Part shown: one piece after another, positions 20,401-59,314 of the stretch
Layout of the letters: the number at the start of each line of letters is the position of its first letter
Numbering within the stretch: the stretch's first letter is position 1
Source of the DNA: Ostrea edulis
Taxonomy: Eukaryota
NCBI RefSeq assembly: GCF_947568905.1
Contig: NC_079167.1
Location: 19,902,001-19,966,000 of the forward strand
Length of the DNA: 64,000 bases
Direction of reading: 5' to 3'
Notes under the pieces: generated by a model
Told to the model about the DNA's origin: nothing
The model's input: the letters and a program-made list of their open reading frames with translations, nothing else
Database searches by the model: none
Program-made: the position numbers and the translations under genes

Positions 20401-20877
20401 TCGTGGACATCATTCATAAAAATATTGATTCCTACAAGTTTTCAATGGCTACTGGAGGAAAAGTCGGAAGTTTTTGTGTACAAAAATCAAAGATGCTGAA
20501 TTTTCTTGTAAACTGGATTCCCGTTTCGTTATGAATTTTGTTTTCAATTTTAGTGACGCTTACAAAGAAATACTGTCTTAATTACGTCGTGATCTTCGTT
20601 ACTACTGATTTAAAGGTTTAATATAATAGATCAAGGTCGAACTTGGATATAGGTTACTTTTCACAAAGATCTGCGTTAATTCTCAAGGTTAAATCAATGG
20701 TGGTATATTTGTCATTGGTGTAGACTCCAAAAAATCCATATGTATAAGATATTCAGTGTTTCCATTGGCATTTGAAGACATGTTATCTCACACAAGCACA
20801 TTGGTTCCTGATTTTGTCTTGGTTTAAAGGTCAAACAACATGGTAACTGGAGCGATCCGTGGTCCGAGGTCAAAACA

Positions 20878-20910
<33 letters not shown>

Positions 20911-21291
20911 GGGGGTAGGTAAAATTTTGAACTAGAAAGGTACCATTCGGCGCGGACATCCATGAAAATTGTAGTTTTTAAAGTGAATTAACCACTTTGT
21001 TGTTATATGCCAAATAAACATAATGGACTTACTCCTTCTAGACGCCTGACCCCACTTTTTAAAATAAATTCTGCTTCATAGCAATAAATCGAAGTTATGG
21101 CAAAACGTATGTTGATGTTTTAAGACATGTACGTCATTTAATTTTCCTGAAAGTTTCTACTACATGAAATACCTTTGCATGCAACATTGTCGGTAATATT
21201 AAATACGTGTAAGCAAGTGACTAATCCACATGTTCAAAAAATGTTCATTTTTAACCTGGAGTTTAAATAGTAGTAAAAAACCCAACGTGTT

Positions 21292-21336
<45 letters not shown>

Positions 21337-21856
21337 TGTTTCCCAGAACTCATACAGTTTACCCAATAGACAAATCATCTTTTGGAAGATGATTGATGGT
21401 GTCCTGTAGATGTGCAATGTGGTTTCAGGAATTTCATTTTCACCCTGGGGGCCAATTAAGGGTTGAAAAACGTTTCAAATGCTTCTAATAGGCTTTTGTA
21501 CTCACCTATAAGTCATTAATCAAATATATATGATCTTCCCCTCCTGCTCCCACTGGGTTTCTCGCCGTTTCTGTTCCGATGCGAGTACTTTACCATAACG
21601 ACTTGCTCCGACCATAAGGACTTGCTCCGTTTAAAAACAATTGTAAAAAAGATACTATCTTTTAAAATGTAGCATTGTTTACTATTTTCTACGGCATCAA
21701 GTCCTCGTGTTCCAACGTAAATATTAGTAAAAGTATTAAATAAAATAATAACATGTGATAACAACTTTCAATGCTTGAAAAACTTTAAAAAAAATTTCAT
21801 TTAATATTATATTTTAGATACAATGTACTTTATCATGAATTCTTACCGTGGCAGTT

Positions 21857-23338
21857 TTACTTAAGTGACACGACACTTATGGGGTACCACCCATACTGTT
21901 TCCTTGATAATCTATTTCTTCGCGTCCAACCATACGCAAATCGTTCCTCGGTACCTCCCATTACTCCCATTGTTTGTTTTATAACTTGTCCTTTTTTAAG
22001 ATCAAGTTCTTTGCTACTTCTAGCTTTGTAACGTGTCGTAGCAATAACTCGGATGTTACGCATTGTACCAATATCGTCGTTCATCTCTGAATAATCTCCT
22101 TCCGCTTGTCTGCAGGGATCGTTGTCTTTAATTGTCTTAGTTGGTTCTGCCTTATCAACACAAAATTCTTTGACGGGGAATGGACTTGGCAGACGACAAG
22201 ATGATTCGCCTGGTAGTTTTATTGTTTCTATATCATCTTCATGATATTCAGTCACTAACGATGAAGGTAATTTCATAATTAGTGGGCTTCTCAGAACTGT
22301 ATCATAATTGGGAAACGTGGCTGTTGTGTTTTGGGCACCGTGAGGGCTATTTTTCTGTGGTGGATTTTGCTGCTGATGGGATGTAGAAGGATGTGATGGG
22401 ACCATTTGTCTCTTACTGGTCTTTGTTCCCTCCTCTTTAACATTCTCCGTGTGCACAGAAGGATTAGTCACTAAAAATACATCAATCCCCGTACCGAGCC
22501 CCGCCTTCTTAAGTCTAGCCCTTTCTTCTGTTTGAATCCAGTTCTGATTATGAATTGAAAGAATATCAATCTCTTGTTGGTTTTGGAAGCATTCAAATGT
22601 CTCACGTGCATTTTCACGAATGAGGTCATATTGCGGAACGATATTTTTCACATACTGTAAAATCACATCAGGAATCCTACTAAACCTGCTTTTGTCTAAT
22701 TCCTTGAGTTCCCGAAACATCATCTGAAGGGTTTTCTTCTTACTAATGATTAAAGACTGTAACTTTGCCTCATCTTCAATACATAATGCAGAACATGTTT
22801 CAATGTGTTTTCGGATATCAGACATCTCTGTGTTCCAGGAATCTAACTTACGCGCGCTCTTGGCAGAATGTCTTTTCCTGTTCTTGGAAAGCTTTCCTTC
22901 CAACTTGATTAAAAGGGCTTTCATGTTGTCTATTGAGTGCTTCTGTTTCATGAGAGCGTTTTCCAGATTTTCCCGCTGTGTGTTGTACGATTTAAATTCT
23001 TCTTCTATTTCTGTCAATCTTTCCTTTTCCAGTCGGGTGTGTTGTAGGACTTTCTGATAGGGGCCACTACTGGCCATGAGTTTATCATAGATGTTTCTAT
23101 GAATTTCTGTCAAGGGGTCTTCATCCCCAGACGAGGGTGATTGGAATAGATTGCCGCCAACATTTTTAAGCAATTCATTTGGATAGCCTTTCCTCCAATT
23201 TTCAATCTCTTGCACATAGGTTAATTTTGCTTCAGCGCGAATCTGTATTATCCGACCTACAGTCTCCTGTAGATGAATAGTGTGTTTGTTTTGCTTAATA
23301 GCTTCTTCTACCAAATAAAAATCAATGGTATCAGCCAT
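21857..23338 (-). CDS. Intronless F-BAR + SH3 protein (divergent PACSIN/syndapin-like), 493 aa, copy 1
   Basis: Uninterrupted ORF with good start context (accATGg). RAEAKLTYVQEIENWRK resembles the FCH motif RA-x-IEK-x-Y-x-QQL-x-EW; LTEIH and MMFRELKELDKSRF resemble PACSIN F-BAR segments. C-terminal SH3-like domain (ATTRY...ELDLKKGQVI...GWYP). Confidence 0.85.
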   Translation of the reverse strand: MADTIDFYLVEEAIKQNKHTIHLQETVGRIIQIRAEAKLTYVQEIENWRKGYPNELLKNVGGNLFQSPSSGDEDPLTEIHRNIYDKLMASSGPYQKVLQHTRLEKERLTEIEEEFKSYNTQRENLENALMKQKHSIDNMKALLIKLEGKLSKNRKRHSAKSARKLDSWNTEMSDIRKHIETCSALCIEDEAKLQSLIISKKKTLQMMFRELKELDKSRFSRIPDVILQYVKNIVPQYDLIRENARETFECFQNQQEIDILSIHNQNWIQTEERARLKKAGLGTGIDVFLVTNPSVHTENVKEEGTKTSKRQMVPSHPSTSHQQQNPPQKNSPHGAQNTTATFPNYDTVLRSPLIMKLPSSLVTEYHEDDIETIKLPGESSCRLPSPFPVKEFCVDKAEPTKTIKDNDPCRQAEGDYSEMNDDIGTMRNIRVIATTRYKARSSKELDLKKGQVIKQTMGVMGGTEERFAYGWTRRNRLSRKQYGWYPISVVSLK

Positions 23339-23445
23339 GGTTAACAGCCAATCGGGTTAACAGCAACACTAGTTGACTAATGGTGACGAAACATAATTAT
23401 GACGTAGAACTATCTATGACGTCAGTCTCATAAATTGAACATTCG

Positions 23446-23527
23446 TAGTCTGGTCCCCGCCTCCGCCACTCATTGATCATTGGTTATTGGGAATGATCAA
23501 TGAGTGGCGGGGGCGGGGACCAGACTA
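23446..23527. promoter_or_regulatory. 36-bp-arm palindrome with GC boxes upstream of the F-BAR/SH3 ORF, with a nearby CRE (TGACGTCA at ~23418)
   Basis: tagtctggtccccgcctccgccactcattgatcatt, loop, aatgatcaatgagtggcgggggcggggaccagacta; probably MITE-derived. Confidence 0.55.
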
Positions 23528-25016
23528 ACGAATAGTAAGCAAACGAACTCTGGCGGAAGTTTGATGTTTTTTTTATGTCAAAATTATCAATATGGTAGCA
23601 CTCGCGCCGTTTTATATATAAACACTTTACTATATAAGGTTACATATCAATTTGACAGACATTTTATATTCTATCCATTTCAATATCAATCTTTTAAAAT
23701 GCGATTTATTAAATATAGACCATAAAATAGCTTGAATATTCACATATTTATTTATATGGTATGCATGTGTTCATATGGTACGTGTGGTTATTTTTAATTG
23801 TATATACTATAAATATGCTGTCTCGAACACTTAGGGTATAAGACTGCCAGTCTCATTGACTTGGCTCAGGCAACACTCCTTGGTATACCCGCTGTGTTTG
23901 TGAAACATTTTATAATATTGTTTTACTTTACTTCCCATATAGCACACTTGTAGAGCACACTTTCAATCAGTATTGTGATGAGCCAATTCAATACATATAT
24001 GTCAATGTAGAATGTAAATAGTGCACATGTGTATATTGTATCATGTAGTTATAATGTTTTTAAACAAAACTGTTAGAATTATATATGCCCCCTGAGGCAT
24101 CTTGATTAATGAATAAATAAGATAAAAATATATTTACATAAATATTGTATGTAGACAGGTAGGCCTAACGAAAGCGTGGTATATTGTTTAACGTCCCGTT
24201 CGAGAATCTTTCACTCCTATGGAGATGTTCATGGGAAATCTTATTCAACCTTGGCATGTCAAGTCGTTTTTCGGGGGGTGGGGGTGATAGAAGTAGTAGG
24301 AAGTTCACTCGTATAAGATTATTGACAAGCAAAACAAATAAAAATTGCGGGGGGAGGGGGGATTTAAGTTCCTCATCAGCTTTAACTGCTTCAATTTTCC
24401 ATCAGTCTTCGATATCTTAAATTGGGGGAAGGAGGTCATCCTTCACTACAATTCAATTTTTGAATTCATAACTTTCAAGCGAGCTTACATTCTTCTCATT
24501 CATCTGATAATAAAACGGCTGTGTACATCTAATATCCACTTATAACATTCAAGATATCGCTAGAACAAAGCACGGTTACAGCTAAGATGATTGATCAATT
24601 CGTTTCTGTTGTGAACATCGCGACATACGATCGCGGAGAGTGAATATTGTGTACTTTTCCCAAATCTTTCTTAGTGCCCGACCCGATTCTTATTGTCCGA
24701 CCCGATTCTTAGTATTCGGTTTTTAGTGTTCGAATACCCGGCGTGGTTATTACGGATTTGTAAATGATACTACGAACAAGATGTACAGGAAAATAGTATA
24801 TGCTACGCATGCTATACATTTTCCCCTGCCCCTTAAAGATCGACTTTGAAATCGCTCCACCAGAGATTGAAAAAATACGAGAAATTGCATTGCTTAGTCT
24901 TTGAACTACACGAACAAAATTCTTGAAATAGAGTTGGTCCGGATAATTCCACACATTGTGGTAATTAAAATAAAAAAAAAAAAACAGACTTGCAGCATAT
25001 AGACAAAAAACAAAAC

Positions 25017-25060
<44 letters not shown>

Positions 25061-25692
25061 CAAGAAGACATAAGTTGCAATCTAATTAATTAAAAGAGAG
25101 TGTTACACCGAAGCGGGAATGTTCCCTAATCATGGCGTATTTGCCTTTTAAATACCTGTAGGATTCCCCAGTACTAGGGGCAAGCCTAATACATTTTAGT
25201 GTCAATACAATATACATGTGGTCTAAACATAATTTTTGAAAATTAAAATGTCTTTTTTCCCCCCTGAGTATCAGATACAATGTATATGGTTATACATGTT
25301 ACGAGTGTATCAAATATTTAATATTCTGTACTACTACAGTCTAAAAGCTCTTACATGTACACTCTATGTATCATAATTCGACTACAACCAACAGTTGGCA
25401 ACTGTACATAACTCTGACCTCAAAACAAAATATGGGAAGTTTATTGTGCATTAATAAAATTCAACATACATGTACATGTAATTCGAAGTACATGCACCTG
25501 ATAACATTGATTCACCATTATAGCAATTTGCTACTGGAATACATATCATCTTATCCACTCAAACTGTTTGACGGTTATTTACCTTGTTTGGCCTTAAAGT
25601 TTTGGAAAGTTCACAACGGTTTTTCATAAAATGCACCATGCCTTTGTCAACACCTTTCACTCAGAAAAACACACAAGTTCTTGTTATTTTTT

Positions 25693-26110
25693 TTTATATT
25701 AGAAGATCTATTTGTAAGTTACGGATATCAGCTCATAAATTAATGATTGAAGTTGGTAGATATTCTGGATGACTAGGAATGAACGAATATGTAACAAATG
25801 CAACTCCGGTTTATTAGGTGATGCGATTCATTTTTTGATTAAATGTGAAAAGTTTGTTGATGAAAGAAAATCTTTTTGTGGTGCTATAGAAAAAACAGTT
25901 AAATTTTTTACCAAACTCAATAATGAACAAAAATTCATTTACATACTATGTTTTGAAGAGCCATCTATTCTAAATATAACTGGAAAATTTATTTTGAACA
26001 ATATATGACACTGTATTTGTATATAACTATGTGTTATGTAATCACTTCTTTCTTTACTTGTATATATATATGTACATTATTTGTATGTATTTGAGGGCCC
26101 TTGATTGGAA
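25693..26110 (+). mobile_element. Non-LTR retrotransposon 3' fragment (C-terminal CCHC region), frameshifted
   Basis: RRSICKLRISAHKLMIEVGRY.../RNERICNKCNSGLLGDAIHFLIKC is a typical LINE ORF2 C-terminal zinc-knuckle motif. Confidence 0.75.
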
Positions 26111-26657
26111 AATAAAATGTTCTAATGTTAGCAACCTTGACTATTAACACACAAGTACCTCATGCTGTATTCGGTGTGTTTGTTGCGAGTCCTGTTCCCA
26201 AACTAAACAGTGTCCAGGTTGGAAGCTTATTACAAACTCGACACATTGTGATAAACAGAGATAATGTAGTGGAAATTTAAAACCGATGAATTGAAATAAA
26301 CGATCAACCATTATCCCCTACCCCAAAAACTTAGGATTTAAAGGTTTGATTTCATTTCTAAATTTTGTAAGATAAGAATTTTCAGACAAATGTAAAACCA
26401 ACTTCTCCGACTGCCCCCTTACAATACACGATGCAATACAACGCGCCTGATTATATTTATAACATCACATGATCTCTCCAGGTGTCTGTTTTTCTTCCCT
26501 AGATTACTTCTAAAATTCTCGGGATTCATTGTATTACAACTTGGACAGAAATAGTAATAAAATACGGCTGTAACCCCCTCCCCCTTTCCCCACCCCTATG
26601 TATATACAGGCGCGGATCTAGAAAATGTTGGGGGAGTGAAAGTGTATGCTCTTCTTT

Positions 26658-26725
26658 CAAACTTCCACCAGAGTTCGTTTGCCCACATTCGTAGGTGACG
26701 TAATGAGGCCTCGACGGGGAGTTTG
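26658..26725. mobile_element. 68-bp MITE with CAAACT...AGTTTG termini and 10-bp TSD; arm 1 only
   Basis: TSD gctcttcttt at 26648-26657 and 26726-26735; arm 2 has a single copy of it (~53415-53430). Confidence 0.8.
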
Positions 26726-26877
26726 GCTCTTCTTTCAGAGAATATCTAAGCGTCACTGAATATTATAACGTCACAATGTACAGCACGTCATAATGTCTAC
26801 GACGTAACACATTCACCCTTGCGACTAAACATAAACATGCTTGCTTGGAGGCGATACGTTCGATAAAAGTAACGCAA

Positions 26878-27765
26878 ATGGAAAATCAAAAGATGATTTC
26901 TGTAAAAGTTTTCCGTTCTATGGCAGACAACAAGGATTTGGAAAATGACTTTGTACCTTATGAACAGGTTAAGGACACCATCTCGAAAATTGAAGTTTTA
27001 AAAGCTGCAAATGCAAATGTCTCTTCATTCCTGCCTTCATGGGCTGACGATGAATATTTCATGCAGTTACACATGCCGAAGAAAATAAAGAAGAGAAATG
27101 TGTTTGAGACAAGTATGGAGACTGGAGAGGCAGTGCTGGAGAAAAAATCAGAAGACAAGACAACCATTGAGAGCGGACGGACAATACTGAATTATGCAAA
27201 GAACGGACGAATCACACATTCTGTTCCTGAGATCAGTGGCGAAGAACTTGATATGAAAACAGAGGATGTCGCAGCATATATCCTGAACATTGTCGAAAAG
27301 GCATGTGCAATAGATCTCCAAGATACAACATCCCAGAAACTAGACCAGGATGACGGCAGAGTTATGGTAGAAACAAAACACGTGAACACTTCAGATGCGA
27401 GTCAGGAAATGAAAAATGAGTGTCTACAGAAACCTGTTAAATTACAAGAATTAAAACAGAAAACCAAGCCATCCAAAAGTGGATTGGACAAACCCGGAGC
27501 GCTTACTGCATTAGAAACAGGGAAAATACCAAAGTTTATTCCCCGAAAGCTGTTTCTATCCAGTTTAGAAACCTTTAAACTTGCACCAGATACCCAGGAT
27601 TCCACCAAGAACAAAGAAGAGAAGACCAAACCCATGAAACCAAGGCCTTTACCGAGTAGTTTCCTCTGCACCACGGGACTTTCTCCTGCGGAAGAACCCC
27701 GTGTGGCGAGATCGCGGAGAACATGGAGGGATCGCATTCTCAGGTTTCTTGGATTTAAAAGATAG
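26878..27765 (+). CDS. Intronless uncharacterised protein, 295 aa from the first in-frame ATG (306 from TTG 26845), copy 1
   Basis: Long ORF kept open in both arms; good start context (caaATGg); K/E-rich, probably disordered; ends RRTWRDRILRFLGFKR. No family recognised. Confidence 0.7.
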   Translation: MENQKMISVKVFRSMADNKDLENDFVPYEQVKDTISKIEVLKAANANVSSFLPSWADDEYFMQLHMPKKIKKRNVFETSMETGEAVLEKKSEDKTTIESGRTILNYAKNGRITHSVPEISGEELDMKTEDVAAYILNIVEKACAIDLQDTTSQKLDQDDGRVMVETKHVNTSDASQEMKNECLQKPVKLQELKQKTKPSKSGLDKPGALTALETGKIPKFIPRKLFLSSLETFKLAPDTQDSTKNKEEKTKPMKPRPLPSSFLCTTGLSPAEEPRVARSRRTWRDRILRFLGFKR

Positions 27766-27816
27766 ACATTCTGAAAATTATGGAGATAGAAACGTGATTT
27801 TAAAGGATTTTTTGCA

Positions 27817-28136
27817 TTTTACAAACGTATTACATGTATGTTGATGGTGTTCTGATATGTTGGTACTTTACAAACGTATTATGTATGTTGATGGTGTTCT
27901 GATATGTTGGTACTTTACAAACGTATTATGTATGTTGATGGTGTTCTGATATGTTGGTACTTTACAAACGTATTATGTATGTTGATGGTGTTCTGATATG
28001 TTGGTACTTTACAAACGTATTATGTATGTTGATGGTGTTCTGATATGTTGGTACTTTACAAACGTATTATGTATGTTCATGGTGTTCTGATATGTTGGTA
28101 CTTTACAAACGTGTTATGTATGTTCATGGTGTTCTA
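27817..28136. repeat. 47-bp tandem repeat, ~7 copies, downstream of the orphan ORF
   Basis: Unit tttacaaacgtattatgtatgttgatggtgttctgatatgttggtac; arm 2 counterpart at ~51950-52320. Confidence 0.93.
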
Positions 28137-28677
28137 ATGTGGATTAAATTTGTTTTCTAACTGTTATACCTCTTGATTGTCCTCATTCTCACTCTAATAC
28201 TGTGAAGCATTATGACGTCAGCACAATCATCTAAATTTAGTTAACAAATGGTGTACATGAGGCGGGCACTAAACAAAACTTTCCAAGTATTTAATGAATA
28301 TAAAAGGAGCAAAAATCACCATTTTTGTATGACATATGACAAGATGTGTGTGTGCGTGTGTGTATGTGTGTGTCATTAAAATGTAACGTTTACATTTGTT
28401 CAAATTGTCTTAACCAATGCTTCTTGACAACACAATTATTAGCTGCTCAGGTGAGCCATAAGGCCCGTGGACCTATTTACTGATCTTACAAAATTGAATG
28501 CCTTTTGTTCATTATGTCATATTAAAAGAAAACATTAGTGCAACACTTATTCGGGCTAGCCATCAGACTATTTGATATGTTCTAAAGCACACACCAACGC
28601 ACACATGTGTGTATATATAATTGGAAATTACTTCTATAGTTGTTGCTGCAAAACCATCCACTTTTGGAATCTCAGAT

Positions 28678-28915
28678 TTTACATCATTAGTGGCCAAGAG
28701 GGTACTTATTTACATCATTAGTGGCCAAGAGGGTACTTATTTACATCATTAGTAGCCAAGAGGGTACTTATTTACATCATTAGTGGCCAAGAGGGTACTT
28801 ATTTACATCATTAGTGGCCAAGAGGGTACTTATTTACATCATTAGTGGCCAAGAGGGTACTTATTTACATCATTAGTGGCCAAGAGGGTACTTATTTACA
28901 TCATTAGTGGACGTG
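28678..28915. repeat. 32-bp tandem repeat, ~7 copies (~5 in arm 2)
   Basis: Unit tacatcattagtggccaagagggtacttattt. Confidence 0.93.
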
Positions 28916-29080
28916 GATCTTGACCATTAATGATATAATTTTTGAATTATATCATTAGTGGACGGTAGGGTAGTATGCTAATGGTATAATTATATCATTA
29001 GTGGTCAGGATCCTGACCACTAATGTAACTTTATATCATTAGTGGGTATTGTAGCATTAATGGTTACTACACACATTTTC

Positions 29081-29365
29081 TAGAATATCAAGTTTCTGTT
29101 AGAATATCAAGTTTCTGTTAGAATGTCACGTTTCTGTTAGAATGTCACGTTTCTGTTAGAATATCACGTTTCTGTTAGAATATCACGTTTCTGTTAGAAT
29201 ATCACGTTTCTGTTAGAATATGAAGTTTCTGTTAGAATATCACGTTTCTGTTAGAATATCAAGTTTCTGTTAGAATATCACGTTTCTGTTAGAATATCAC
29301 GTTTCTGTTAGAATATCACGTTTCTGTTAGAATATCAAGTTTCTGTTAGAATATCAAGTTTCTGT
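29081..29365. repeat. 19-bp VNTR, 15 copies (one copy in arm 2)
   Basis: Unit tagaatatcacgtttctgt; 285 bp = 15 x 19. Confidence 0.95.
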
Positions 29366-29633
29366 TAGAAACACATGTCTATGGTCCACGTATTGCAGCC
29401 CTTTTTTAAAGGACAGCAACTTGGGTTTTTTCCACAATTACTCTATATAGGCCTAACTGGTTTAATTTTGTCGATCTACTGCACAACCCACAATCTGTGC
29501 CAACCAAGGGGGGGGGGGGGGGGGGGGGGAACCCAAAACGGGCTTAGCTAGCCCCTGTGGAGCAAACGGCCGATCTCCTGCACAATCATTTTATTTATAT
29601 CAAATTTCTTGAAAAAAGTGACAATTCAGTCCT

Positions 29634-29913
29634 CAGGGCCGTAACTGCCGATGAGGCAGACGAGGCAACTGCCTCGTCTGATTTTTTGGCAAAAAAGAAA
29701 ATAAAATTATATAAATGTTATATTATAGGATATATGTTTAAAATGAAGACAAGCACCTTTGTCTTTGACACCATATTACGATTCTTTACATAGTACAAAT
29801 GAAACACAAACATGATAAATTGGGATTTAAAAAGTGTCATTTTCAGTCGTAAAGTCAATCGGCGGCCCCCAATCCCCTGCCTCCCCTGATTTAGAACCCT
29901 ACTTACGGCCCTG
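29634..29913. mobile_element. 280-bp MITE with CAGGGCCGTAA TIR and 5-bp TSD (GTCCT); arm 1 only
   Basis: TSD at 29629-29633 and 29914-29918; empty site with a single GTCCT in arm 2 (aggac at 50653-50657). Confidence 0.92.
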
Positions 29914-30428
29914 GTCCTGTCACTCTTTACAGGACATGATAGCCAAGGGCGGTGTTAAGTACATTTTATTTGTTGCCTTTGTGTATTTCGATTGAATCCA
30001 CACATCGCGGCAGCAGCAGCAACAAAACAAAAAAAAGCTGGGGGGGGGGGGGTGTAGTTGTATCCGTTACTTCTTATGCCTGTGTCAGACAGCTGTTCAG
30101 CTGCATATCCAAGTTAACCGTTACAAGTGCAAATAATTCCCAGATATTTATATTCATGTGTGAGATGAATTTGATATTAAAGATCGATACAGTTTTTCTC
30201 ATAGAAGTTTCTTGAAATGGCTTTAATATAGATCTTTAAATTTATTTTCTTCGCATTTTGAAAGACTTTTTCTCTTGAAATTTCTTTTTTCGCTTTAAAA
30301 AAATCCTTTTTATAACTTTTTCTCAGTTTTCTTTTAATCATTCGTCTGCACCCTCTCCCCAGTCGACCCCCCCCCCCCCTCCCCCAAATTGATAATACAG
30401 AGTTAGTGCCCTTTGGAAATGTTTGGAA

Positions 30429-30444
30429 ACTTCCGGTGCACGTG
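30429..30444 (+). promoter_or_regulatory. TBL3 proximal promoter motifs: ETS site plus E-box
   Basis: ACTTCCGGT (ETS/GABP-type) and CACGTG 50-65 nt upstream of the inferred ATG, as is typical of housekeeping promoters. Confidence 0.5.
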
Positions 30445-30494
30445 TTGTACAGAATGATGTACAGGAAAGAAAGCTGATAGTCTTATATGAAGTC

Positions 30495-33400
30495 ATGTCA
30501 CAACTGAAAGAGAGGTACAGTATTTTATTTTTTTTGTTTGTTTCAGATTACCAGTAATCTGAGTTTACCGCACGACTGGCTTAGAACAATTGACTGTTGG
30601 TGAAATATTTAGACACCGTGCTCATCACGGTAATGCAGCATAAACGTAAACAATCCCAAGTGGCTGTCTCTCCGTGCCACGAAATTCATCTGCCAACATT
30701 GATTCAAAACTGAAAATATATTAAAACGTCAAAATTGATAAAAATGCATCTTAAACATTGCAACGAATTTTTAACCAACCTTATTCAGTCACAATCGGTG
30801 ATCATGAGGACGGTAATTCACAGATGCACCCTGATAAAAATAAAGCAGTTGTTGACTACTTGTGTTATAATAGAGCTCCTGTGCTGTACTTGGGATGTTA
30901 TAGCAAAAGTATGCAGTAAATTCTTTATTATTGAATATCCGGGTGCCTATGTTGAAAAGGACTTGCACGTTTATAATTTAGACAATCTTTGAATTAAGGG
31001 AAATGTTTGAAAAACATTCTTAGTATTGGTATATTCAATTTAAAGTTTATCACCTTCCTCTGTAAATTCCATATTGTAGCAAAAATTTATGGAAGTTAAA
31101 CAATTTGCAAACACTTCTCCATTAGCGAGATCTTCTTGCTAAAATGTGATTATTCCTCTTTAGCAAGAAAGTAAACATTATCATGAACAGGTGTTTTGAT
31201 TGAAAATAATGGCTAATTCCATGCAATGCTGAATAAGTGTGACACTCAGTCAACATGAAGCGAATTGTCTCTATAAAATTGACAACACAGTCAAGAAATT
31301 TCATATCAACTTTGCTGTGTAAGTGGAACTAATGCACATCGTGAGTGTTTTTGCTTTGATTTATATATTTGCAGATATATCAGACGTATTAGCACTTTTT
31401 CTTCTTTTCACATGAAACAGGAAGAGATGTACTCAACGAATGTTTTTCTCGATTGTATGGGATATATTAATACTTTCACTAAAGAGGGATAATCGCGTTT
31501 TCGAGAGAATATCTCTCTGTAGGGGAAGTGTTCCCAACCTGTTAAAAGACTATTTCAATACTGTGTTGTGATTCATTTTCTGGTTATGTATACAGGTAGA
31601 CATTTTTATGTAAGATTTTTATCCACAGTTTCGCAGTAGAAACAAAGTATGAACCCATTTTTACTGGCGGAAAAATTCACGTAAGTATTTATAAACATAT
31701 AGAATTAGTAATTAAACTTTTAAAGATTGGATTGATTGATTGTGTACTGTTTAACATCCCTCTCGAGAATTTTCCACTCAAATGGAGATGTCACCATTGC
31801 CAGTGAAGGACTGCAAAATTTAGGCCTATGCTCTGCGCTTATGGCCATTGAACAGGGAGGGATCTTTATTGTGCTACACCTGATGTGATACAGGGCCTCG
31901 GTTTTTGCGATCTCATCTGAAGGACCACCCCATTTAGTAGTCTCTTACGACAAGCAAGGGGTGCTAAGGACCTATTCTAACCTGGATCCCCACAGGATTA
32001 AACATTGGAATGTTTGTACAAATGGCAGTGAAATACAGAACCTAGTAGGGACAACATGAATAGAGTTCCATCTTTTTTATAATAACTCCTATTTACCTCT
32101 ATCTCCCCCAAAAAATACCCACCAATAATAATGTTAGAATAGAATTTGAAAATGACCTCAACAGCAAAATATCTTTCCGAGCAACAGGAGACTTGTCAGT
32201 CTACTTGAATGCAGTTACAGATTCTTTTCCTGTTTTCAGATTTCTAAAGATGGAGTTTTTATGTTCTGTGGATGTGGAAATAAAATCCACATACTTGATA
32301 TAGAATCAGGCCAAACCAAGATCACATTATCCCAGGTTTGTATTCCGTATAATGTGTATGACTGCATGACATGTGTAGCATACACGTAGCTTCATCTAGA
32401 TGTTTTTTACTATTTCCAGATAGCACTAATTTTTAAATGATCCTCGCTTCAGCCGTTTAGTGAACTAGTTGTTTTAAAATCAATCGTGATATGATATCAA
32501 AGTAAAAAAAAAAATTAGAAACTTTTGAGGATGAGTATTGAAAAATATATTTTGATGTGATATGTATTGCGATGCAGCGTAAAGATAAGCAACATATGGA
32601 ATTTTACAAACAACATTACTTTTACTTGTGTTTGTTGTGTACACCTTGTAGTGCAGTTGTATTTTACAAAATAAATAAAATCATTAAATCACCAGAACTA
32701 ACAATTTCTGACTGATGCATGCTTCCGTTGCATTAGTATAAATATTAAATGTCATTCAACAAATTAATTACAACCAAGAGTAATGTACTGATAATTGGCA
32801 TTGTTGATTCTTGTCTCCTTGCAGGGCATTAATCAAATGCATTTCCCTCCCATGCTATTTTAGATAAAATGAACAACATATTTATTTTTACTCATCTGTA
32901 AGTTGCCTACAGATCTATCAGAGTTGTACAAAAATCCACTGAAAATCATGTAAACTAGACATAATATCATTTATTCCAGAAATTAATTTGACCAAATGAT
33001 CAATTGATTTGTATATAGTAATCATCTGAGGTTGTGTATTGACAGGAAGAAGATGAAGAAATCACCCATTTTTGTCTCTCTCCAAGTAATGAGGTAAGTT
33101 TTTCAAAAATACCTATATACATTGTAGGTACTGCACTGTGCTTCATGCTTTATCTCCATTTTTATTGACTCCACATTCATTTAAGATTTACACATATCAG
33201 TGTTTACATTCATCTGATTTGTACAGTTACGTTCAATCTGTCCACTACTGTACAATTATTTATTATTATAAATATTTTTGTGGGATGATGTTTGAGTAAG
33301 AATAACTTCTTATTTTTTATTTATGATTGAGTAGTTCACTCTTTCTTGTTTGGGAAGGCTGTACATTTGTTGATGTACAATGAAAATAATGGAAATAAAC

Positions 33401-49482: not shown

Positions 49483-49610
49483 ACGTTTATGCTGCATTAC
49501 CGTGATGAGCATGGTGTCTAAATATTTCACCAACAGTCAATTGTTCTTAGCCAGTCGTGCGGTAAACTCAGATTACTGGTAATCTGAAACAAAAAAATAA
49601 AATACTGTAC

Positions 49611-49630
49611 CCCTCTTTCAGTTGTGACAT
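49611..49630 (-). pseudogene. Duplicated TBL3 coding exon 1 (ATG TCA CAA CTG AAA GAG GG|GT) with promoter copy at 50140-50155
   Basis: Reverse complement of 30495-30514 with one substitution and an intact GT donor; CACGTG and ACCGGAAGT retained upstream. Confidence 0.85.
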
Positions 49631-49672
49631 GACTTCATATAAGACTATCAGCTTTCTTTCATGTACATCATT

Positions 49673-50121
49673 CAATCTCTACCCAGAGTTATCGTTCCTT
49701 ACACTCACTTACACCCCTGTAAACGTCTCGGGGGGGGTTTTACAAGATTTTTGTAAAATGGCACATATGATCAAATAAAGTATGGTTTTGACTTCAGTTA
49801 CAAAAATATACGTAAATAAATAAATATTGAGCAGATGTCAAGTCTTTTTGTGACACAAGAAGCATTGATTTGGGTTGAAACGTAGATATTTGGTAGTTCT
49901 ATTGCACCAGGCCTATACATAGGTACATGAAGAATATATAGTAATGGAAAAAAAATATACAAATAGTTGCTTGTCCTACATTTTCCAGATATTTTATAAA
50001 ATAGTTCTTAGTTTTATTAGCCGTAAAAAAGTGGATTTACATGTGGAATAAAATTGCTTATTTTGAGACGTTAACAGAGGTGTAAGTGAGAGCAAGGAAC
50101 GACAACTCTGGGTAGAGATTG
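49673..50121. mobile_element. 449-bp MITE with ~55-bp TIR, CAATCT...AGATTG termini and 10-bp TSD; arm 2 only
   Basis: TSD gtacatcatt / gtatatcatt; empty site in arm 1 at ~30450-30465. Confidence 0.88.
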
Positions 50122-51000
50122 GTATATCATTCTGTACAACACGTGCACCGGAAGTTTCCAAACATTTCCAAAGGGCACTAACTCTGTATTATCAATTAGG
50201 GGGGGGGGGGGTGCAGACGAATGATTGAAAGAAAACTGAGAAAAAGTTATAAAAAAGGATTATTTTTTTTTAAGCGAAAAAAGAAATTTCAAGAGAAAAA
50301 ATCTTTCAAAATGCGAAGAAAATAAATTTAAAGATCTATATTAAAACCATTTCAAGAAACTTCTATGAGAAAAACTGTATCGATCTTTAATATCAAATTC
50401 ATCTCGCACATGAATATAAATATCTGGGAATTATTTGCACTTGTAACGGTAAACTTGGATATGCAGCTGAACAGCTATCTGACACAGGCATAAGAAGTAA
50501 CGGATACAACTACACCCACCCACCCCACCCTCTGGCTTTTTTTTTTTTTTTTTGCTGCCGCTGCGATGTGTGGATTCAATCGAAATACACACAGGCAACA
50601 AATAAAATGTACTTAACACCGCCCTTGGCTATCTTGTCCTGTAAAGAGTGACAGGACTGAATTGTCACATTTTTCAAGAAATTTGATATAAATAAAATGA
50701 TTGTGCAGGAGATCGCCCGTTTGCACCACAGGGGCTAGCTAAGCCCGTTTTGGGTCCCCCCCCCCCCCCCCCCCCCCAAGTGGTTGAGTAAATCAACAAA
50801 ATTAAACCAGTTAGGCCTATATAGAGTAATTGTGGAAAAAACCCAAGTTGCTGTCTTTTAAAAAAGGGCTGCAATGCGTGGACCATAGACATGTCTTTCT
50901 AACAGAAACTTGATATTCTAGGGTGAAAATGTGTGTAGTAACCATTAATGCTACAATATCCACTAATGATATAAAGTTACATTAGTGGTCAGGATCCTGA

Positions 51001-51149
51001 CAATCTGATTAAAATAAGATCTTTGATCCGCTCCGTTATTCCAATCTGATTAAAATAAGATCTTTGATCCGCTCCGTTATTGTTATGTCGCTACACAAAG
51101 CGACATAACAATAACGGAGCGGATCAAAGATCTTATTTTAATCAGATTG
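51001..51149. mobile_element. Foldback MITE (108-bp palindrome plus 41-bp duplicated left arm) with 9-bp TSD GGATCCTGA; arm 2 only
   Basis: TSD at 50992-51000 and 51150-51158; same family as 16412-16512; empty site at 28996-29025. Confidence 0.88.
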
Positions 51150-52381
51150 GGATCCTGACTACTAATGATATAATTATACCATTAGCATACTACCCTACCG
51201 TCCACTAATGATATAATTCAAAGATTATATCATTAATGGTCAAGATCCACGTCCACTAATGATATAAATAAGTACCCTCTTGGCCACTAATGATGTAAAT
51301 AAGTACCCTCTTGGCTACTAATGATGTAAATAAGTACCCTCTTGGCCACTAATGATGTAAATAAGTACCCTCTTGGCCACTAATGATGTAAATAAGTACC
51401 CTCTTGGCCACTAATGATATAAAATCTGAGATTCCAAAAGTGGATGGTTTTGCAGCAACAACTATAGAAGTAATTTTCCATCATATATACACGCATGTGT
51501 GCGTTGGTGTGTGCTTTAGAACATATCAAAGTCTGATGGCTAGCCCGAACAAGTGTTACACTAATGTTTTCTTTTAATATGACATAATGAACAAAAGGCA
51601 TTCAATTTTGTAAGATCAGTAAATACGTCCACGGGCCTTATGTCTCACCTGAGCAGCTAATAATTATGTTGTCAAGAAGCATTGGTTAAGACAATTTGAA
51701 CAAATGTAAACGTTACATTTTAATGACACACACACACATCTTGTCATATGTCATACAAAAATGGTGATTTTTGCTCCTTTTATATTCATTAAATACTTGG
51801 AAAGTTTTGTTTATAGTGCCCGCCTCGAGTACACCATTTGTTAACTTTTAGATGAATGTGCTGACGTCATAATGCTTCACAGTATTAGAGTGAGAATGAG
51901 GACAATCAAGAGGTATAACAGTTAGAAAACAAATTTAATCCACATTAGAACACCATGAACATACATAATACGTTTGTAAAGTACCAACATATCAGAACAC
52001 CATGAACATACATAATACGTTTGTAAAGTACCAACATATCAGAACACCATGATCATACATAATACGTTTGTAAAGTACCAACATATCAGAACACCATGAT
52101 CATACATAATACGTTTGTAAAGTACCAATATATCAGAACACCATGAACATACATAATACGTTTGTAAAGTACCAACATATCAGAACACCATGAACATACA
52201 TAATACGTTTGTAAAGTACCAACATATCAGAACACCATGATCATACATGTAATACGTTTGTAAAGTACCAACATATCAGAACACCACGAACATGCACATA
52301 CATATAATACGTTTGTAAAATGCAAAAAATCCTTTAAAATCATGTTTCTATCTCCATAATTTTCAGAATGTCTATTTTTTT

Positions 52382-53263
52382 TTAAAATCCAAGAAATCTG
52401 AGAATGCGATCCCTCCATGTTCTCCGCGATCTCGCCACACGGGGTTCTTCCGCAGGAGAAAGCCCCGTGGTGCAGAGGAAACTACTCGGTAAAGGCCTTG
52501 GTTTCATGGGTTTGGTCTTCTCTTCTTTGTTCTTGGTGGAATCCTGGGTATCTGGTGCAAGTTTAAAGGTTTCTATACTGGATAGAAACAGCTTTCGGGG
52601 AATAAACTTGGGTATATTCCCTGTTTCTAATGCAGTAAGCTCTCCGGGTTTGTCCAATCCACTTTTGGATGGCTTGGTTTTCTGTTTTAATTCTTGTAAT
52701 TTAACAGGTTTCTGTAGACACTCATTTTTCATTTCCTGACTCGCATCTGAAGTGTTCACATGTTTTGTTTCTACCATAACTCTGCCGTCATCCTGGTCTA
52801 GTTTCTGGGATGTTGTATCTTGGAGATCTATTGCACATGCCTTTTCGACAATGCTCAGGATATATGCTGCGACATCCTCTGTTTTCATCTCAAGTTCTTC
52901 GCCACTGATCTCAGAAACAGAATGTGTGATTCGTCCGTTCTTTGCATAATTCAGTATTGCCCGTCCGCTCTCGATGGTTGTCTTGTCTTCTGATTCTTTC
53001 TCCAGCACTGCCTCTCCAGTCTCCATGCTTGCCTCAAACACATTTCTCTTCTTTATTTTCTTCGGCATGTGTAACTGCACGAAATATTCATCGTCAGCCC
53101 ATGACGGCAGGAATGAAGAGACATTTGCATTTGCAGCTTTTAAAACTTCAATTTTCGAGATGGTGTCCTTAACCTGTTCATAAGGTACAAAGTCATTTTC
53201 CAAATCCTTGTTGTCTGCCATAGAACGGGAAACTTTTACAGAAATCATCTTTTGATTTTCCAT
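52382..53263 (-). CDS. Intronless uncharacterised protein, copy 2 (293 aa from ATG)
   Basis: Paralog of 26878-27765: 11 amino-acid substitutions, and a stop two codons earlier (ends RFLGF). Confidence 0.7.
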   Translation of the reverse strand: MENQKMISVKVSRSMADNKDLENDFVPYEQVKDTISKIEVLKAANANVSSFLPSWADDEYFVQLHMPKKIKKRNVFEASMETGEAVLEKESEDKTTIESGRAILNYAKNGRITHSVSEISGEELEMKTEDVAAYILSIVEKACAIDLQDTTSQKLDQDDGRVMVETKHVNTSDASQEMKNECLQKPVKLQELKQKTKPSKSGLDKPGELTALETGNIPKFIPRKLFLSSIETFKLAPDTQDSTKNKEEKTKPMKPRPLPSSFLCTTGLSPAEEPRVARSRRTWRDRILRFLGF

Positions 53264-54004
53264 TTGCGTTACTTTTATCGAACGTATCGCCTCCAAGCAA
53301 GCGCACAGTATTGTTTATGTTTAGTCGCAAGGGTGAATGTGTTACGTATTACACATTATGACGTGCTGTACATTGTGACGTTATAATATTCAATGACGCT
53401 TAGATATTCTCTGAAAGAAGAGCATACACTTTCTCTCCCCCAACATTTTCTAGATCCGCGCCTGTATATATATATAGGGGTGGGGAAAGGGGGAGGGGGT
53501 TACAGCCGTATTTTATTACTATTTCTGTCCAAGTTGTAATACAATGAATCCCGAGAATTTTAGAAGTAATCTAGGGAAGAAAAACAGACACCTGGAGAGA
53601 TCATGTGATGTTATAAATATAATCAGGCGCGTTGTATTGCATCGTTTATTGTAAGGGGGCAGTCAGAGAAGAAGTTGGTTTTACATTTGTCTGAAAATTC
53701 TTATCTTACAAAATTTAGAAATGAAATCAAACCTTTAAATCCTAAGTTTTTGGGGTAGGGGATAATGGTTGATCGTTTTTTTCAATTCATCGGTTTTAAA
53801 TTTCCACTACATTATCTCTGTTTATCACAATGTGTCGAGTTTGTAATAAGCTTCCAACCTGGACACTGTTTAGTTTGGGAACAGGACTCGCAACAAACAC
53901 ACCGAATACAGCATGAGGTACTTGTGTTTTAATAGTCAAGGTTGCTAACATTAGAACATTTTATTTTCCAATCAAGGGCCCTCAAATACATACAAATAAT
54001 GTAC

Positions 54005-54342
54005 TATAGGATTAAACATTCTTTTGGAAGAATTTATCGATGTGTAAACTCCGGACATTTTACTCACAAACTGAATAAAAGTGCGAAGCACTTTTATGTT
54101 AAGTTTGTGAGTAAAATATCCGGAGTTTACACATCGATAAATTCTTCCAAAAGAATGTTTGATTCTTATAATTCCAATTCATTGACTTTATTAACAATTG
54201 CAAAAATTTGAATAGTTACCCGCACTATGTTGTTTGTTTTCAGGCGTGTATGAATACATCGCGTTTTCGGATTTATTGATGTGTAAACTCTTGTTCAGCT
54301 TTATTTTTGTCCAATCAAAACAATTGTAATAAATAAGATTGG

Positions 54343-54350
<8 letters not shown>
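54005..54350. mobile_element. Arm-2-only insertion: ~165-bp palindrome plus a 184-bp element with tataattccaat TIRs
   Basis: 54014-54084 and 54088-54160 are near-perfect inverted arms; absent at the arm-1 site (~26060-26072). Confidence 0.75.
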
Positions 54351-54387
<37 letters not shown>

Positions 54388-54472
54388 AGTAAAGAAAGAA
54401 GTGATTACATAACACATAGTTATATACAAATACAGTGTCATATATTGTTCAAAATAAATTTTCCAGTTATAT

Positions 54473-54770
54473 TTAGAATAGATGGCTCTTCAGAACATAG
54501 TATGTAAATGAATTTTTGTTCATCATTGAGTTTGGTAAAAAAAAATTAACTGTTTTTTCTATAGCACCACAAAAAGATTTTCTTTCATCAACAAACTTTT
54601 CACATTTAATCAAAAAATGAATCGCATCACCTAATAAACCGGAGTTGCATTTGTTACATATTCCTTCATTCCTAGTAATACCAGAATATCTACCAACTTC
54701 AATCATTAATTTATGAGCTGATATCCGTAACTTACAAATAGATCTTCTAATATAAAAAAATAACAAGAAC
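54473..54770 (-). mobile_element. Non-LTR retrotransposon 3' fragment, arm-2 copy
   Basis: RRSICKLRISAHKLMIEVGRYSGITRNEGICNKC...HFLIKC. Confidence 0.75.
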
Positions 54771-55397
54771 TTGTATGTTTTTCTGAGTGAAAGGTGTTGA
54801 CAAAGGCATGGTGCATTTTACGAAAAACCGTTGTGAACTTTCCAAAACTTTAAGGCCAAACAAGGTAAATAACCGTCAAACAGTTTGAGTGGATAAGATG
54901 CTATGTATTCCAGTAGCAAATTGCTATAATGGTGAATCAATGTTATCAGGTGCATGTACTTCGAATTACATGCACATGTATGTTGAATTTTATTAATGCG
55001 CAATAAACTTCCCATATTTTGTTTTGAGGTCAGAGTTATGTACAGTTGCCAACTGTTGGTTGTAGTCGAATTATGATACATAGAGTGTACATGTAAGAGC
55101 TTTTAGACTGTAGTAGTACAGAATATTAAATATTTGATACACTCGTAACATGTATAACCATATACATTGTATCTGATACTCAGGGGGAAAAAAGACAATT
55201 TAATTTTCAAAAATTATGTTTAGACTACATGTATATTGTATTGACACTAAAATGTATTAGGCTTGCCCCTAGTACTGGGGAATCCTACAGGTATTTAAAA
55301 GGCAAATACGCCATGATTAGGGAACATTCCCGCTTAAGTGTAACACTCTCTTTTAATTAATTAGATTGCAACTTATGTCTTCTGGGTTTTTTCTTTG

Positions 55398-55440
<43 letters not shown>

Positions 55441-55913
55441 GTTTTGTTTTTGTCTATATGCTGCAAGTCTGTTTTTTAAAAATTACCACAATGTGTGGAA
55501 TTATCCGGACCAACTCTATTTCAAGACTTGTTCGTGTAGTTCAAAGACTAAGCAATGCAATTTCTCGTATTTTTTCAATCTCTGTTGGAGCGATTTCAAA
55601 GTCGATCTTTAAGGGGCAGTGGAAAATGTATAGTATGTGTAGCATATACTATTTTCCTGTACATCTTGTTCGTAGTATCATTTACAAATCCGTAATAACC
55701 ACGCCGCGTATTCGAACACTAAAAACCGAATACTAAGAATCGGGTTGGACAATAAGAATCGGGTCAGGCACTAAGAAAGATTTGGGAAAAGTACACAATA
55801 TTCACTCCCCGCGATCGTATGTCGCGATGTTCACAACAGAAACGAATTGATCAATCATCTTAACTGTAACCGTGCTTTGCTCTAGCGATATCTTGAATGT
55901 TATAAGTGGATAT

Positions 55914-57164: not shown

Positions 57165-57271
57165 CGACTGATCAATTTATGAGACTGACGTCATAGATAG
57201 TTCTACGTCATAATTATATTTTGTCACAATTAGTCAACTAGTGTTGCTGTTAACCCGATTGGCTGTTAACC

Positions 57272-59268: not shown

Positions 59269-59314
<46 letters not shown>

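What the first reader, a model, noticed from the sequence alone, without database searches (positions are those of the whole stretch)
21857..23338. Intronless, highly divergent F-BAR + SH3 (PACSIN/syndapin-like) gene with a non-canonical SH3
Seen: a single-exon 493-aa ORF in a genome where neighbouring genes have many introns. The N-terminal ~290 aa match F-BAR motifs by eye (RAEAKLTYVQEIENWRK versus PACSIN RARIEKAYAQQLTEWAR). The linker has no NPF motifs. In the SH3, ALYDY is replaced by ATTRY, the RT loop is basic (KARSSK) and the conserved ligand-binding Trp appears to be Phe (EERFAYG). Established: PACSINs are multi-exon membrane-shaping proteins with NPF motifs and a PxxP-binding SH3. Inference: a retrogene-like, lineage-specific membrane-shaping protein with altered ligand specificity.
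Basis: partly seen in the sequence, partly recalled or inferred. Interest (0 to 1): 0.7.

Follow-up and report, generated by a model that had tools for sequence, protein, structure and literature searches.

The report
Intronless oyster PACSIN-like membrane-protein gene
This is a real, intact oyster gene for a very divergent relative of the membrane-bending protein PACSIN/syndapin. It lost all eleven ancestral introns at once and sits twice in the window; the finding is interesting for gene-family evolution but ordinary in kind.

Summary
The 493-codon ORF at 21857-23338 (-) is confirmed. A 95% identical second copy lies at 57272-58750 (+), in the other arm of a ~10 kb inverted duplication.

Pfam does not recognise the N-terminus. 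Three other results do:
- The AlphaFold model's best matches are nearly all F-BAR domains.
- A profile built from mollusc relatives hits only PACSIN/syndapin F-BARs in the PDB (E down to 3.8e-10).
- The C-terminal profile hits PACSIN1/2/3 SH3 domains first.

The family is not oyster-private. It occurs in mussel, scallop, clams and abalone, and NCBI already names the Pacific-oyster member PACSIN1.

In Pacific oyster and mussel the gene has 12 coding exons. The window copies, Ostrea edulis LOC130053769 and some metagenome contigs have none of the 11 introns and form one clade (100/100). This supports a retrogene, or a cDNA-mediated wipe-out of introns.

Several features differ from PACSIN:
- The wedge loop and the NPF motifs are absent.
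- The SH3 is basic (pI 10.6) and lacks the ALYDY and NY tyrosines.
- The claimed Trp-to-Phe change is ambiguous.

Expression is only hinted at. Whether the two copies are true paralogues or haplotypes is not settled. The scan had not noted this family before.

The parts
21857..23338 (-). Copy 1: single-exon CDS, 493 aa plus stop
   Evidence: ORF list and translation. Homologues at E 5.9e-152 to 2.7e-64.
22499..23338 (-). F-BAR domain of PACSIN type (about aa 1-280), without a wedge loop
   Evidence: AF2 model has pLDDT 75 and long helices. Foldseek ranks 1-45 are F-BARs or the related GMIP N-terminal domain. VIA-align top 13 are the same kind, Z 11-13.5. Profile A5 hits only PACSIN F-BARs, E 3.8e-10. 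PACSIN's 'kqmmgg' is an insertion relative to the family; the window has RLEKERLTE at 23009-23035.
22049..22498 (-). Acidic, low-complexity linker (about aa 281-430); no NPF, one PxxP
   Evidence: Motif scan and pI 5.15. Poorly conserved except for one motif.
22160..22237 (-). Conserved linker motif DDIETIKLPGESSCRLPSPFPVKEFC (aa 368-393)
   Evidence: Best conserved block of the linker across the oyster proteins aligned. Recognisable by eye, not aligned, in mussel, scallop, clam and abalone sequences. Coordinates.
21860..22048 (-). Non-canonical, basic SH3 domain (aa 431-493)
   Evidence: Sub-threshold SH3_1/SH3_2 in the window protein. SH3_2 reaches E 1.3e-6 in a family member. Profile A8 hits PACSIN2/1/3 SH3 at 3.9e-6 to 3.3e-5. 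pI 10.6.
23384..23424 (-). Upstream cluster of CRE-like sites (TGACGTCA at 23417-23424, two TGACG half-sites)
   Evidence: Conserved in both copies, O. edulis, the ENA contig and the multi-exon M. gigas gene. Coordinates.
23437..23575 (.). High-copy foldback element about 100-240 bp upstream of the ATG, absent in some individuals
   Evidence: 36-nt arms, 97% complementary. Contigs of X1, X2 and X4 skip 23436-23576 or 23436-23644, and depth there is 3271 against about 35 for unique DNA in X1.
21627..21856 (-). Probable 3' UTR
   Evidence: Contigs of run X5 that match copy 1 exactly run from the ORF across the stop to 21627. About 110 nt after the stop align with O. edulis.
57272..58750 (+). Copy 2: single-exon CDS, 492 aa plus stop
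   Evidence: tblastn 95.3% identity. ORF list.
20744..30647 (.). Left arm of the inverted duplication that carries copy 1
   Evidence: Self-BLAST: 20744-30647 matches 59859-49483 at about 91-99% identity.
49483..59859 (.). Right arm of the inverted duplication that carries copy 2
   Evidence: Self-BLAST.

Best explanation
The ORF is a functional or recently functional protein-coding gene. It is an intronless member of a fast-evolving, mollusc-restricted gene family that descends from PACSIN/syndapin: an N-terminal F-BAR domain, a long disordered linker and a C-terminal SH3.

Shown here:
- The ancestral gene of this family had 12 coding exons.
- The flat-oyster lineage carries a clade of copies that lack all 11 introns, best explained by one retroposition of a spliced mRNA.
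- The intronless form later spread by DNA duplication, including the ~10 kb inverted duplication in this window.

Inferred:
- The protein most likely dimerises through its F-BAR and binds curved, acidic membranes.
- It lacks PACSIN's membrane-inserting wedge loop and its NPF motifs.
- Its SH3 is strongly basic, with a basic RT loop, and lacks two of the aromatic ligand-groove residues. It probably does not recruit dynamin- or N-WASP-type basic PxxP partners and uses another ligand.
- The conserved linker motif is a candidate for that ligand or for an intramolecular contact.
For: Gene:
- Intact 493- and 492-codon ORFs.
- dN/dS against O. edulis P0001 is 0.36-0.43 at dS 0.7-0.8.
- The CDS differs by 2.0% between the two copies, against 3.1% for most flanking DNA and 7.5% just after the stop codon. 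The CDS has a single in-frame indel.

F-BAR of PACSIN type:
- Foldseek ranks 1-45 are F-BARs or the F-BAR-like GMIP domain, with PACSIN first.
- VIA-align top 13 are the same kind. PACSIN/syndapin gives the lowest rmsd, 4.9-5.0 A over 235 residues.
- Profile A5 hits PACSIN2 at 3.8e-10, PACSIN1 at 1.1e-8, fly Syndapin at 6.9e-7 and PACSIN3 at 3.4e-4, and no other F-BAR subfamily at E<10.
- Four relatives give weak FCH hits, three of them N-terminal and of near domain length.
- Language-model neighbours are FCH+SH3 clusters.

SH3: PACSIN2/1/3 are the best PDB matches.

Intron loss:
- M. gigas and Mytilus have 12 coding exons with matching boundaries. S. cucullata and Argopecten are multi-exon.
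- O. edulis P0001 and ENA contig L003 are uninterrupted.
- The intronless rows form one clade at 100/100.
- The locus differs: CLN3 neighbours the M. gigas and S. cucullata genes but is not in the window.

Divergent features: no wedge loop; no NPF; SH3 pI 10.6; ALYDY first Tyr and NY Tyr lost across the family.
Against: - No run on record as RNA holds the gene. Expression rests on one run of unknown kind.
- dN/dS between the two window copies is 0.9-1.3, so there is no sign of purifying selection since they split.
- Pfam FCH fails on the window protein.
- The fold-match Z scores lie in the range that long helical bundles can reach by chance (note).
- The SH3 model is poor, pLDDT 59.
- The upstream CRE-like cluster is shared with the multi-exon M. 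gigas gene. A plain mRNA retrocopy would carry it only if it lies in the 5' UTR.
- Membrane binding, dimerisation and ligand choice were not tested.
Confidence: 0.8

Rival explanations
1. The intronless state arose in place rather than by retroposition to a new site. Recombination of the genomic gene with a reverse-transcribed copy of its own mRNA removed the introns and kept the native promoter. The gene was moved and duplicated later at the DNA level.
For: The proximal upstream TGACGTCA / CGTCA cluster is conserved between the multi-exon M. gigas gene and all intronless copies. No poly(A) remnant or target-site duplication is recognisable. The later spread is DNA-based.
Against: The window and the O. 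edulis locus lack the CLN3 neighbour of the M. gigas and S. cucullata genes. Loss of all 11 introns at once is more typical of a full-length retrocopy. The conserved block could simply be 5' UTR carried on the mRNA.
Confidence: 0.15
2. The two window copies are decaying, untranscribed retrocopies that have not yet picked up a disabling mutation.
For: dN/dS between the copies is 0.9-1.3, with 22 of 28 changed codons non-synonymous. No RNA run is listed. The protein is absent from a 15-billion-protein collection.
Against: The ORF stayed open over dS 0.7-0.8 from O. edulis P0001, with dN/dS 0.36-0.43. The SH3 part shows 0.2 even between the two copies. The CDS is less diverged than its flanks and its only indel is in frame. 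In run X5, depth on the ORF and 3' flank is 10-100 times higher relative to repeats than in the DNA run X1, which looks like RNA.
Confidence: 0.1
3. The second copy is not a paralogue. The inverted duplication is two haplotypes of one locus joined wrongly in the assembly.
For: The arms differ by about 3-4%, within oyster heterozygosity. In independent individuals most variant letters equal the other copy's letters, and mosaic contigs exist. At some sites only one variant is seen per run.
Against: There is no gap (no N) in the window. The arms are inverted around a unique 19 kb gene rather than placed at a contig end. Summed depth inside the arm is 2.5-9 times that of the unique flank in X1. 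Contigs drop variants, so absence of a variant is not shown.
Confidence: 0.15
4. The N-terminus is a generic coiled coil, not an F-BAR.
For: Pfam FCH does not match the window protein. An oyster-only profile finds no F-BAR in the PDB. The atlas shape search is weak.
Against: The wider family profile hits PACSIN F-BARs over about 255 positions at E 3.8e-10 and nothing else significant. Two independent structure aligners rank F-BARs first.
Confidence: 0.03

Closest known systems
PACSIN / syndapin (PACSIN1-3, Drosophila Synd)
   Same: Domain order is F-BAR, linker, C-terminal SH3. It is the only F-BAR subfamily reached by the family profile and gives the best SH3 matches. The motif ERAxxExxYxxxLxxW, the conserved Pro of the SH3 (PACSIN1 P437; PMC3517540) and overall length are shared.
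   Different: Only about 11-14% identical over the structural alignments. There is no wedge loop; PACSIN1 M126 in that loop is needed for vesiculation (PMC3517540). The window protein has no NPF motifs. The SH3 is basic, with RT-loop acids replaced and the first ALYDY Tyr and the NY Tyr lost. It has five extra residues around strand c. The CDS is single-exon.
Mollusc family of 'uncharacterized' F-BAR/SH3 proteins (M. gigas protein named PACSIN1 by NCBI; O. edulis LOC130053769; Mytilus LOC143082495; Argopecten, Mya, Ruditapes, Sinanodonta, Haliotis members)
   Same: Same family: E 5.9e-152 to 2.2e-11. Same conserved linker motif and the same SH3 signature GFAYGWTRE...YGWYP.
   Different: The window copies have no introns, like O. 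edulis P0001 and unlike the members in M. gigas, S. cucullata, Mytilus and Argopecten. They are only 54% identical to their nearest relative. They have a 3-residue insert (GVM) in the n-Src region and Lys where others have Asn or Asp before the EL of the RT loop.
Other F-BAR + SH3 proteins (CIP4/FBP17/TOCA, NOSTRIN, PSTPIP, Nwk/FCHSD, Hof1/Cdc15/Imp2)
   Same: Same fold class, Z 11-13.5. Language-model neighbours include NOSTRIN, Bzz1 and Cip4 clusters.
   Different: None is reached by the sequence profile at E<10. There is no HR1 domain, no second SH3 and no other extra domain.

Membership tests
F-BAR (FCH-BAR) domain superfamily | Match to the FCH / F-BAR sequence profile | tested here: inconclusive
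   Pfam FCH gives no hit on the window protein. It gives sub-threshold hits (E 0.001-0.004) in four relatives, three of them N-terminal and of near domain length. The family profile does match solved PACSIN F-BARs at E 3.8e-10.
F-BAR (FCH-BAR) domain superfamily | Elongated bundle of three long helices with the F-BAR topology | tested here: met
   AF2 helices span 5-51, 75-153 and 159-238. Foldseek ranks 1-45 and VIA-align top 13 are F-BARs or F-BAR-like, with 216-235 residues aligned.
F-BAR (FCH-BAR) domain superfamily | Antiparallel homodimer that binds and bends membranes | not testable with these tools
   No multimer prediction or coordinates were available. This needs SEC-MALS and liposome assays.
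PACSIN / syndapin subfamily | F-BAR closer to PACSIN than to other F-BAR subfamilies | tested here: met
   Only PACSIN1/2/3 and fly Syndapin are hit by profile A5. They also give the lowest rmsd.
PACSIN / syndapin subfamily | Hydrophobic wedge loop (…KQMMGGF…) in the F-BAR | tested here: not met
   The loop is an insertion in PACSIN relative to the family profile. The window has the charged RLEKERLTE inside a continuous, confident helix.
PACSIN / syndapin subfamily | NPF motifs in the linker (EHD binding) | tested here: not met
   None in either window copy. A single NPF in O. edulis P0001 and the ENA proteins lies inside the conserved LPxPF motif.
PACSIN / syndapin subfamily | C-terminal SH3 of PACSIN type | tested here: met
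   PACSIN2/1/3 SH3 are the top PDB hits of profile A8, E 3.9e-6 to 3.3e-5.
Canonical PxxP-binding SH3 | Conserved ligand-groove residues (ALYDY tyrosines, RT-loop acids, Trp, Pro, NY Tyr) | tested here: not met
   The first ALYDY Tyr is Thr. The RT loop is KARSSKE. The Tyr of NY is Val. The second ALYDY Tyr and the Pro are kept. The Trp is ambiguous, F467 or W471. The fold model was too poor to settle it.
Retrogene (processed gene copy) | Lacks all introns of a multi-exon parent | tested here: met
   The 11 intron positions of M. gigas map to window aa 22, 57, 99, 137, 206, 243, 287, 307, 361, about 417 and 450, and all are absent.
Retrogene (processed gene copy) | New genomic location | tested here: met
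   CLN3 flanks the M. gigas and S. cucullata genes. It is absent from the window and from the O. edulis locus.
Retrogene (processed gene copy) | Poly(A) remnant and target-site duplication | tested here: inconclusive
   Only a short A or T run lies 65-80 nt after the stop, and homology with O. edulis runs past it. The event is too old for these marks (dS about 0.8).
Retrogene (processed gene copy) | Transcription of the copy | tested here: inconclusive
   No RNA run is listed. Run X5, of unknown kind, covers the ORF and 3' flank but not the unique flanks.

The most novel reading that the evidence does not exclude
Molluscs have a second, unstudied PACSIN-derived lineage that has been rebuilt: no wedge loop, a basic SH3 with a changed groove, and a conserved linker peptide. 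It would act through a partner set unlike the dynamin/N-WASP/EHD network. In flat oysters the original multi-exon gene was replaced by a retrogene that then multiplied and evolves fast, as expected for a gene drawn into a germline or host-pathogen conflict.
Probability: 0.25. Interest if true: 0.55.

Novelty: new variant of a known kind. Interest (0 to 1): 0.4.

Why it matters
PACSIN/syndapin is usually treated as a conserved endocytic adaptor with a fixed tool-kit: a wedge loop, NPF motifs and a dynamin-binding SH3. This family is a natural experiment in which all three are altered while the F-BAR + SH3 scaffold is kept for the whole history of molluscs. It can show which PACSIN features the scaffold needs and which serve particular partners.

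The flat-oyster copies add a clean case of a retrogene clade that seems to have taken over from its parent. The practical gain is better annotation: these genes are mostly labelled 'uncharacterized', and the window's copies appear in no protein collection searched here.

Tried and rejected
- Pfam on the window protein gave no FCH hit and only sub-threshold SH3.
- phmmer and oyster-only profiles against the PDB gave only coiled-coil noise. The signal appeared only after distant mollusc members were added.
- AF2 of the SH3 alone gave pLDDT 59, too poor to place the Trp or to search with.
- The atlas shape search was weak: the Nervous wreck F-BAR came first at TM 0.40, followed by ClpB coiled coils.
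- Exact look-up of both window proteins found nothing on record.
- Two searches for RNA runs listed none. The four runs laid were contigs. Three looked like whole-genome DNA by their even coverage and total size, so starts, ends and expression could not be read.
- Synteny searches of the window against the O. edulis, M. gigas and S. cucullata loci found only the gene itself and repeats.
- Paper searches for PACSIN or syndapin in oysters or bivalves found nothing relevant.
- The species of the window was not identified. Shared repeats, one 136 bp stretch being 100% identical to O. edulis, suggest Ostrea or a close relative.
- No canonical mollusc PACSIN sequence could be brought in by reference. 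A tree against canonical PACSIN, PSTPIP, NOSTRIN and GAS7 was therefore not built.

Full report
**Observation**

The window holds an uninterrupted ATG ORF of 493 codons at 21857-23338 on the minus strand. The DNA is 32-39% G+C. Only six ORFs in the window reach 200 aa. Two are this ORF and its twin, two are a duplicated 304/306-aa ORF, and two lie in a tandem repeat. An ORF this long is therefore far beyond chance.

The twin is at 57272-58750 (+), 492 aa and 95.3% identical. Self-comparison shows that both sit in the arms of an inverted duplication, 20744-30647 against 59859-49483, at about 91-99% identity. Between the arms lies a WD40-repeat gene on the plus strand, whose repeats fall in separate small ORFs. 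Other notes of the scan call it TBL3.

**What the protein is**

There is no FCH match, and SH3_1 and SH3_2 score only 13.9 and 13.7 bits, below their cut-offs.

The word search found eight relatives, the named ones all from oysters:
- Ostrea edulis LOC130053769, 54% identity
- Saccostrea cucullata, 45%
- Magallana gigas, 43%, named PACSIN1 by NCBI
- Crassostrea virginica
- four proteins from short metagenome contigs

An AlphaFold model of residues 1-296, built on these, has mean pLDDT 75. It consists of long helices at 5-51, 75-153 and 159-238.
- Foldseek against the PDB puts F-BAR or F-BAR-like domains at ranks 1-45, PACSIN2 and syndapin I first, at E 2.7e-4 and TM about 0.5.
- An independent aligner over 48,161 representative chains gives 13 F-BAR-type chains as its top 13, at Z 11-13.5.
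- PACSIN2 and fly syndapin show the lowest rmsd, 4.9-5.0 A over 235 residues. The tool warns that such Z values are not decisive for helical bundles.

The decisive result is by sequence. The exhaustive profile search found only 34 proteins at E<=0.001. Among them are more distant members from Mytilus, Argopecten, Mya, Sinanodonta, Ruditapes and the gastropod Haliotis. Several carry weak FCH and SH3 hits; in three of them the FCH hit lies at the N-terminus.

A 16-sequence profile of the N-terminal domain (A5) then matched solved structures:
- PACSIN2 at E 3.8e-10
- PACSIN1 at 1.1e-8
- Drosophila Syndapin at 6.9e-7
- PACSIN3 at 3.4e-4

The match runs over about 255 positions. No other F-BAR subfamily appears even at E<10.

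A 12-sequence profile of the C-terminus (A8) hits PACSIN2, PACSIN1 and PACSIN3 SH3 domains as the best of all SH3s in the PDB, at E 3.9e-6 to 3.3e-5. Both ends of the protein therefore descend from PACSIN/syndapin.

**How it differs from PACSIN**

- Wedge loop. In the profile alignment the PACSIN wedge loop (…KQMMGGF…) is an insertion relative to the mollusc family. The window protein has the charged RLEKERLTE there, inside a confident continuous helix. In PACSIN1 that loop, including M126, is needed for vesiculation (PMC3517540).
- Linker. The window protein has no NPF and a single PxxP. The linker is poorly conserved except for one block, DDIETIKLPGESSCRLPSPFPVKEFC at aa 368-393. That block is conserved among the oyster proteins aligned and is recognisable by eye in the mussel, scallop, clam and abalone sequences.
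- SH3 charge. The SH3 is strongly basic, pI 10.6, with 14 K+R against 4 D+E.
- SH3 groove. ALYDY reads ATTRY, the RT loop is KARSSKE, and the NY of the 3-10 turn reads SV. Loss of the first Tyr and of the NY Tyr is family-wide. The Pro equivalent to PACSIN1 P437 is kept.
- Trp. HMMER pairs the PACSIN Trp with F467 in three alignments, with a five-residue insert after strand c. In one alignment it pairs the Trp with W471, with a longer n-Src loop. W471 is nearly invariant in the family, while F467 varies among F, M and L. The SH3 model, at pLDDT 59, is too poor to decide.

**Origin**

The M. gigas gene spans 8.7 kb with 12 coding exons. The Mytilus gene also has 12, with matching boundaries. 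The S. cucullata and Argopecten genes span 9.6 kb and 19.6 kb and are split into several exons. The 11 intron positions map to window residues 22, 57, 99, 137, 206, 243, 287, 307, 361, about 417 and 450. All are absent here, in O. edulis P0001 and in metagenome contig L003.

In a maximum-likelihood tree the uninterrupted sequences form one clade inside the oysters, with 100/100 support. The clade has three sublineages and longer branches than the multi-exon genes.

The M. gigas and S. cucullata genes lie next to CLN3. The window and the O. edulis locus do not.

This fits one retroposition in the flat-oyster lineage followed by DNA-level duplication. No second O. edulis protein appeared in the search, which hints that the parent is gone there.

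One caveat applies. A proximal cluster of CRE-like sites, with TGACGTCA at 23417-23424, is shared with the M. gigas gene. Either that block is 5' UTR carried on the mRNA, or the introns were removed in place through a cDNA.

**Is it alive?**

- Against O. edulis P0001, dN/dS is 0.36-0.43 at dS 0.7-0.8, and 0.18 in the SH3. Selection has therefore kept the frame for most of its history, although loosely.
- Between the two window copies dN/dS is 0.9-1.3, with 28 changed codons of which 22 are non-synonymous.
- The CDS is nevertheless less diverged than its flanks: 2.0% against 3.1% for most flanking DNA and 7.5% for the 230 bases after the stop. Its only indel is 3 bp.
- No run on record as RNA holds the gene.
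- Three of the four runs laid look like whole-genome DNA. They cover genic and intergenic DNA alike, and their contigs total about a genome's worth of letters.
- The fourth, X5, covers the ORF and 230 nt beyond the stop but not the unique flanks. Relative to the repeats, its depth on the gene is 10-100 times higher than in X1. That pattern looks like RNA but is not proof.
- X5 contigs include stretches that match copy 1 exactly and a mosaic carrying seven copy-2 letters.

**Are there really two copies?**

The variant letters in independent individuals are mostly those of the other copy, with mosaics and a third type as well. That fits gene conversion between inverted paralogues. It equally fits allelic recombination if the assembly joined two haplotypes. 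The absence of gaps, the inverted layout around a unique gene and the higher summed depth inside the arm favour a true duplication. I put this at about 85%.

**Verdict**

This is not a private oyster invention. It is a member of a mollusc-wide, PACSIN-derived family that databases already hold, mostly as 'uncharacterized' and once as PACSIN1. No paper on it was found.

What is new:
- recognition that the family is a rebuilt PACSIN, without a wedge loop or NPF and with a basic, altered SH3
- recognition that flat oysters carry it as an intronless, duplicated clade

Function is inferred from the fold only.

Noticed in passing
window 23437-23575 (and 57035-57170 in the other arm): A foldback element with 36-nt arms, 97% complementary and 10 nt apart, sits 100-240 bp upstream of the ATG. 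It is a high-copy repeat (depth about 3271 against 35 in X1). Some contigs of three individuals skip it, so its insertion appears polymorphic.
   Followed up: partly
window 55914-56049: A 136-bp insertion is present in the right arm only (between 24528 and 24532 of the left arm). It is 100% identical to a stretch of the Ostrea edulis locus L001:6223-6358 and 80-87% identical to other copies. It is probably a recently active MITE and a hint that the window comes from Ostrea or a close relative.
   Followed up: no
window 26845-27765 (+) and 52382-53296 (-): A second ORF of 306/304 aa is duplicated in both arms and has no Pfam match. Another first-stage note already lists it.
   Followed up: no
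L003 (ENA contig), proteins P0004-P0007 and P0009: One sublineage of the intronless clade ends after the conserved linker motif (about 410 aa) and has no SH3. These are F-BAR-only derivatives of unknown species.
   Followed up: partly
L006:18319-20124 (Argopecten irradians): The exon encoding residues 523-547 of the scallop homologue (start of the SH3) is repeated about ten times in tandem, every ~128 bp, inside the intron before the last exon.
   Followed up: no
window 1-1224, 1976-3336, 36034-36739, 39789-40567, 43819-45514, 46814-47342: Several long tandem-repeat arrays are visible in the self-comparison, two of them inside the WD40 gene region.
   Followed up: no
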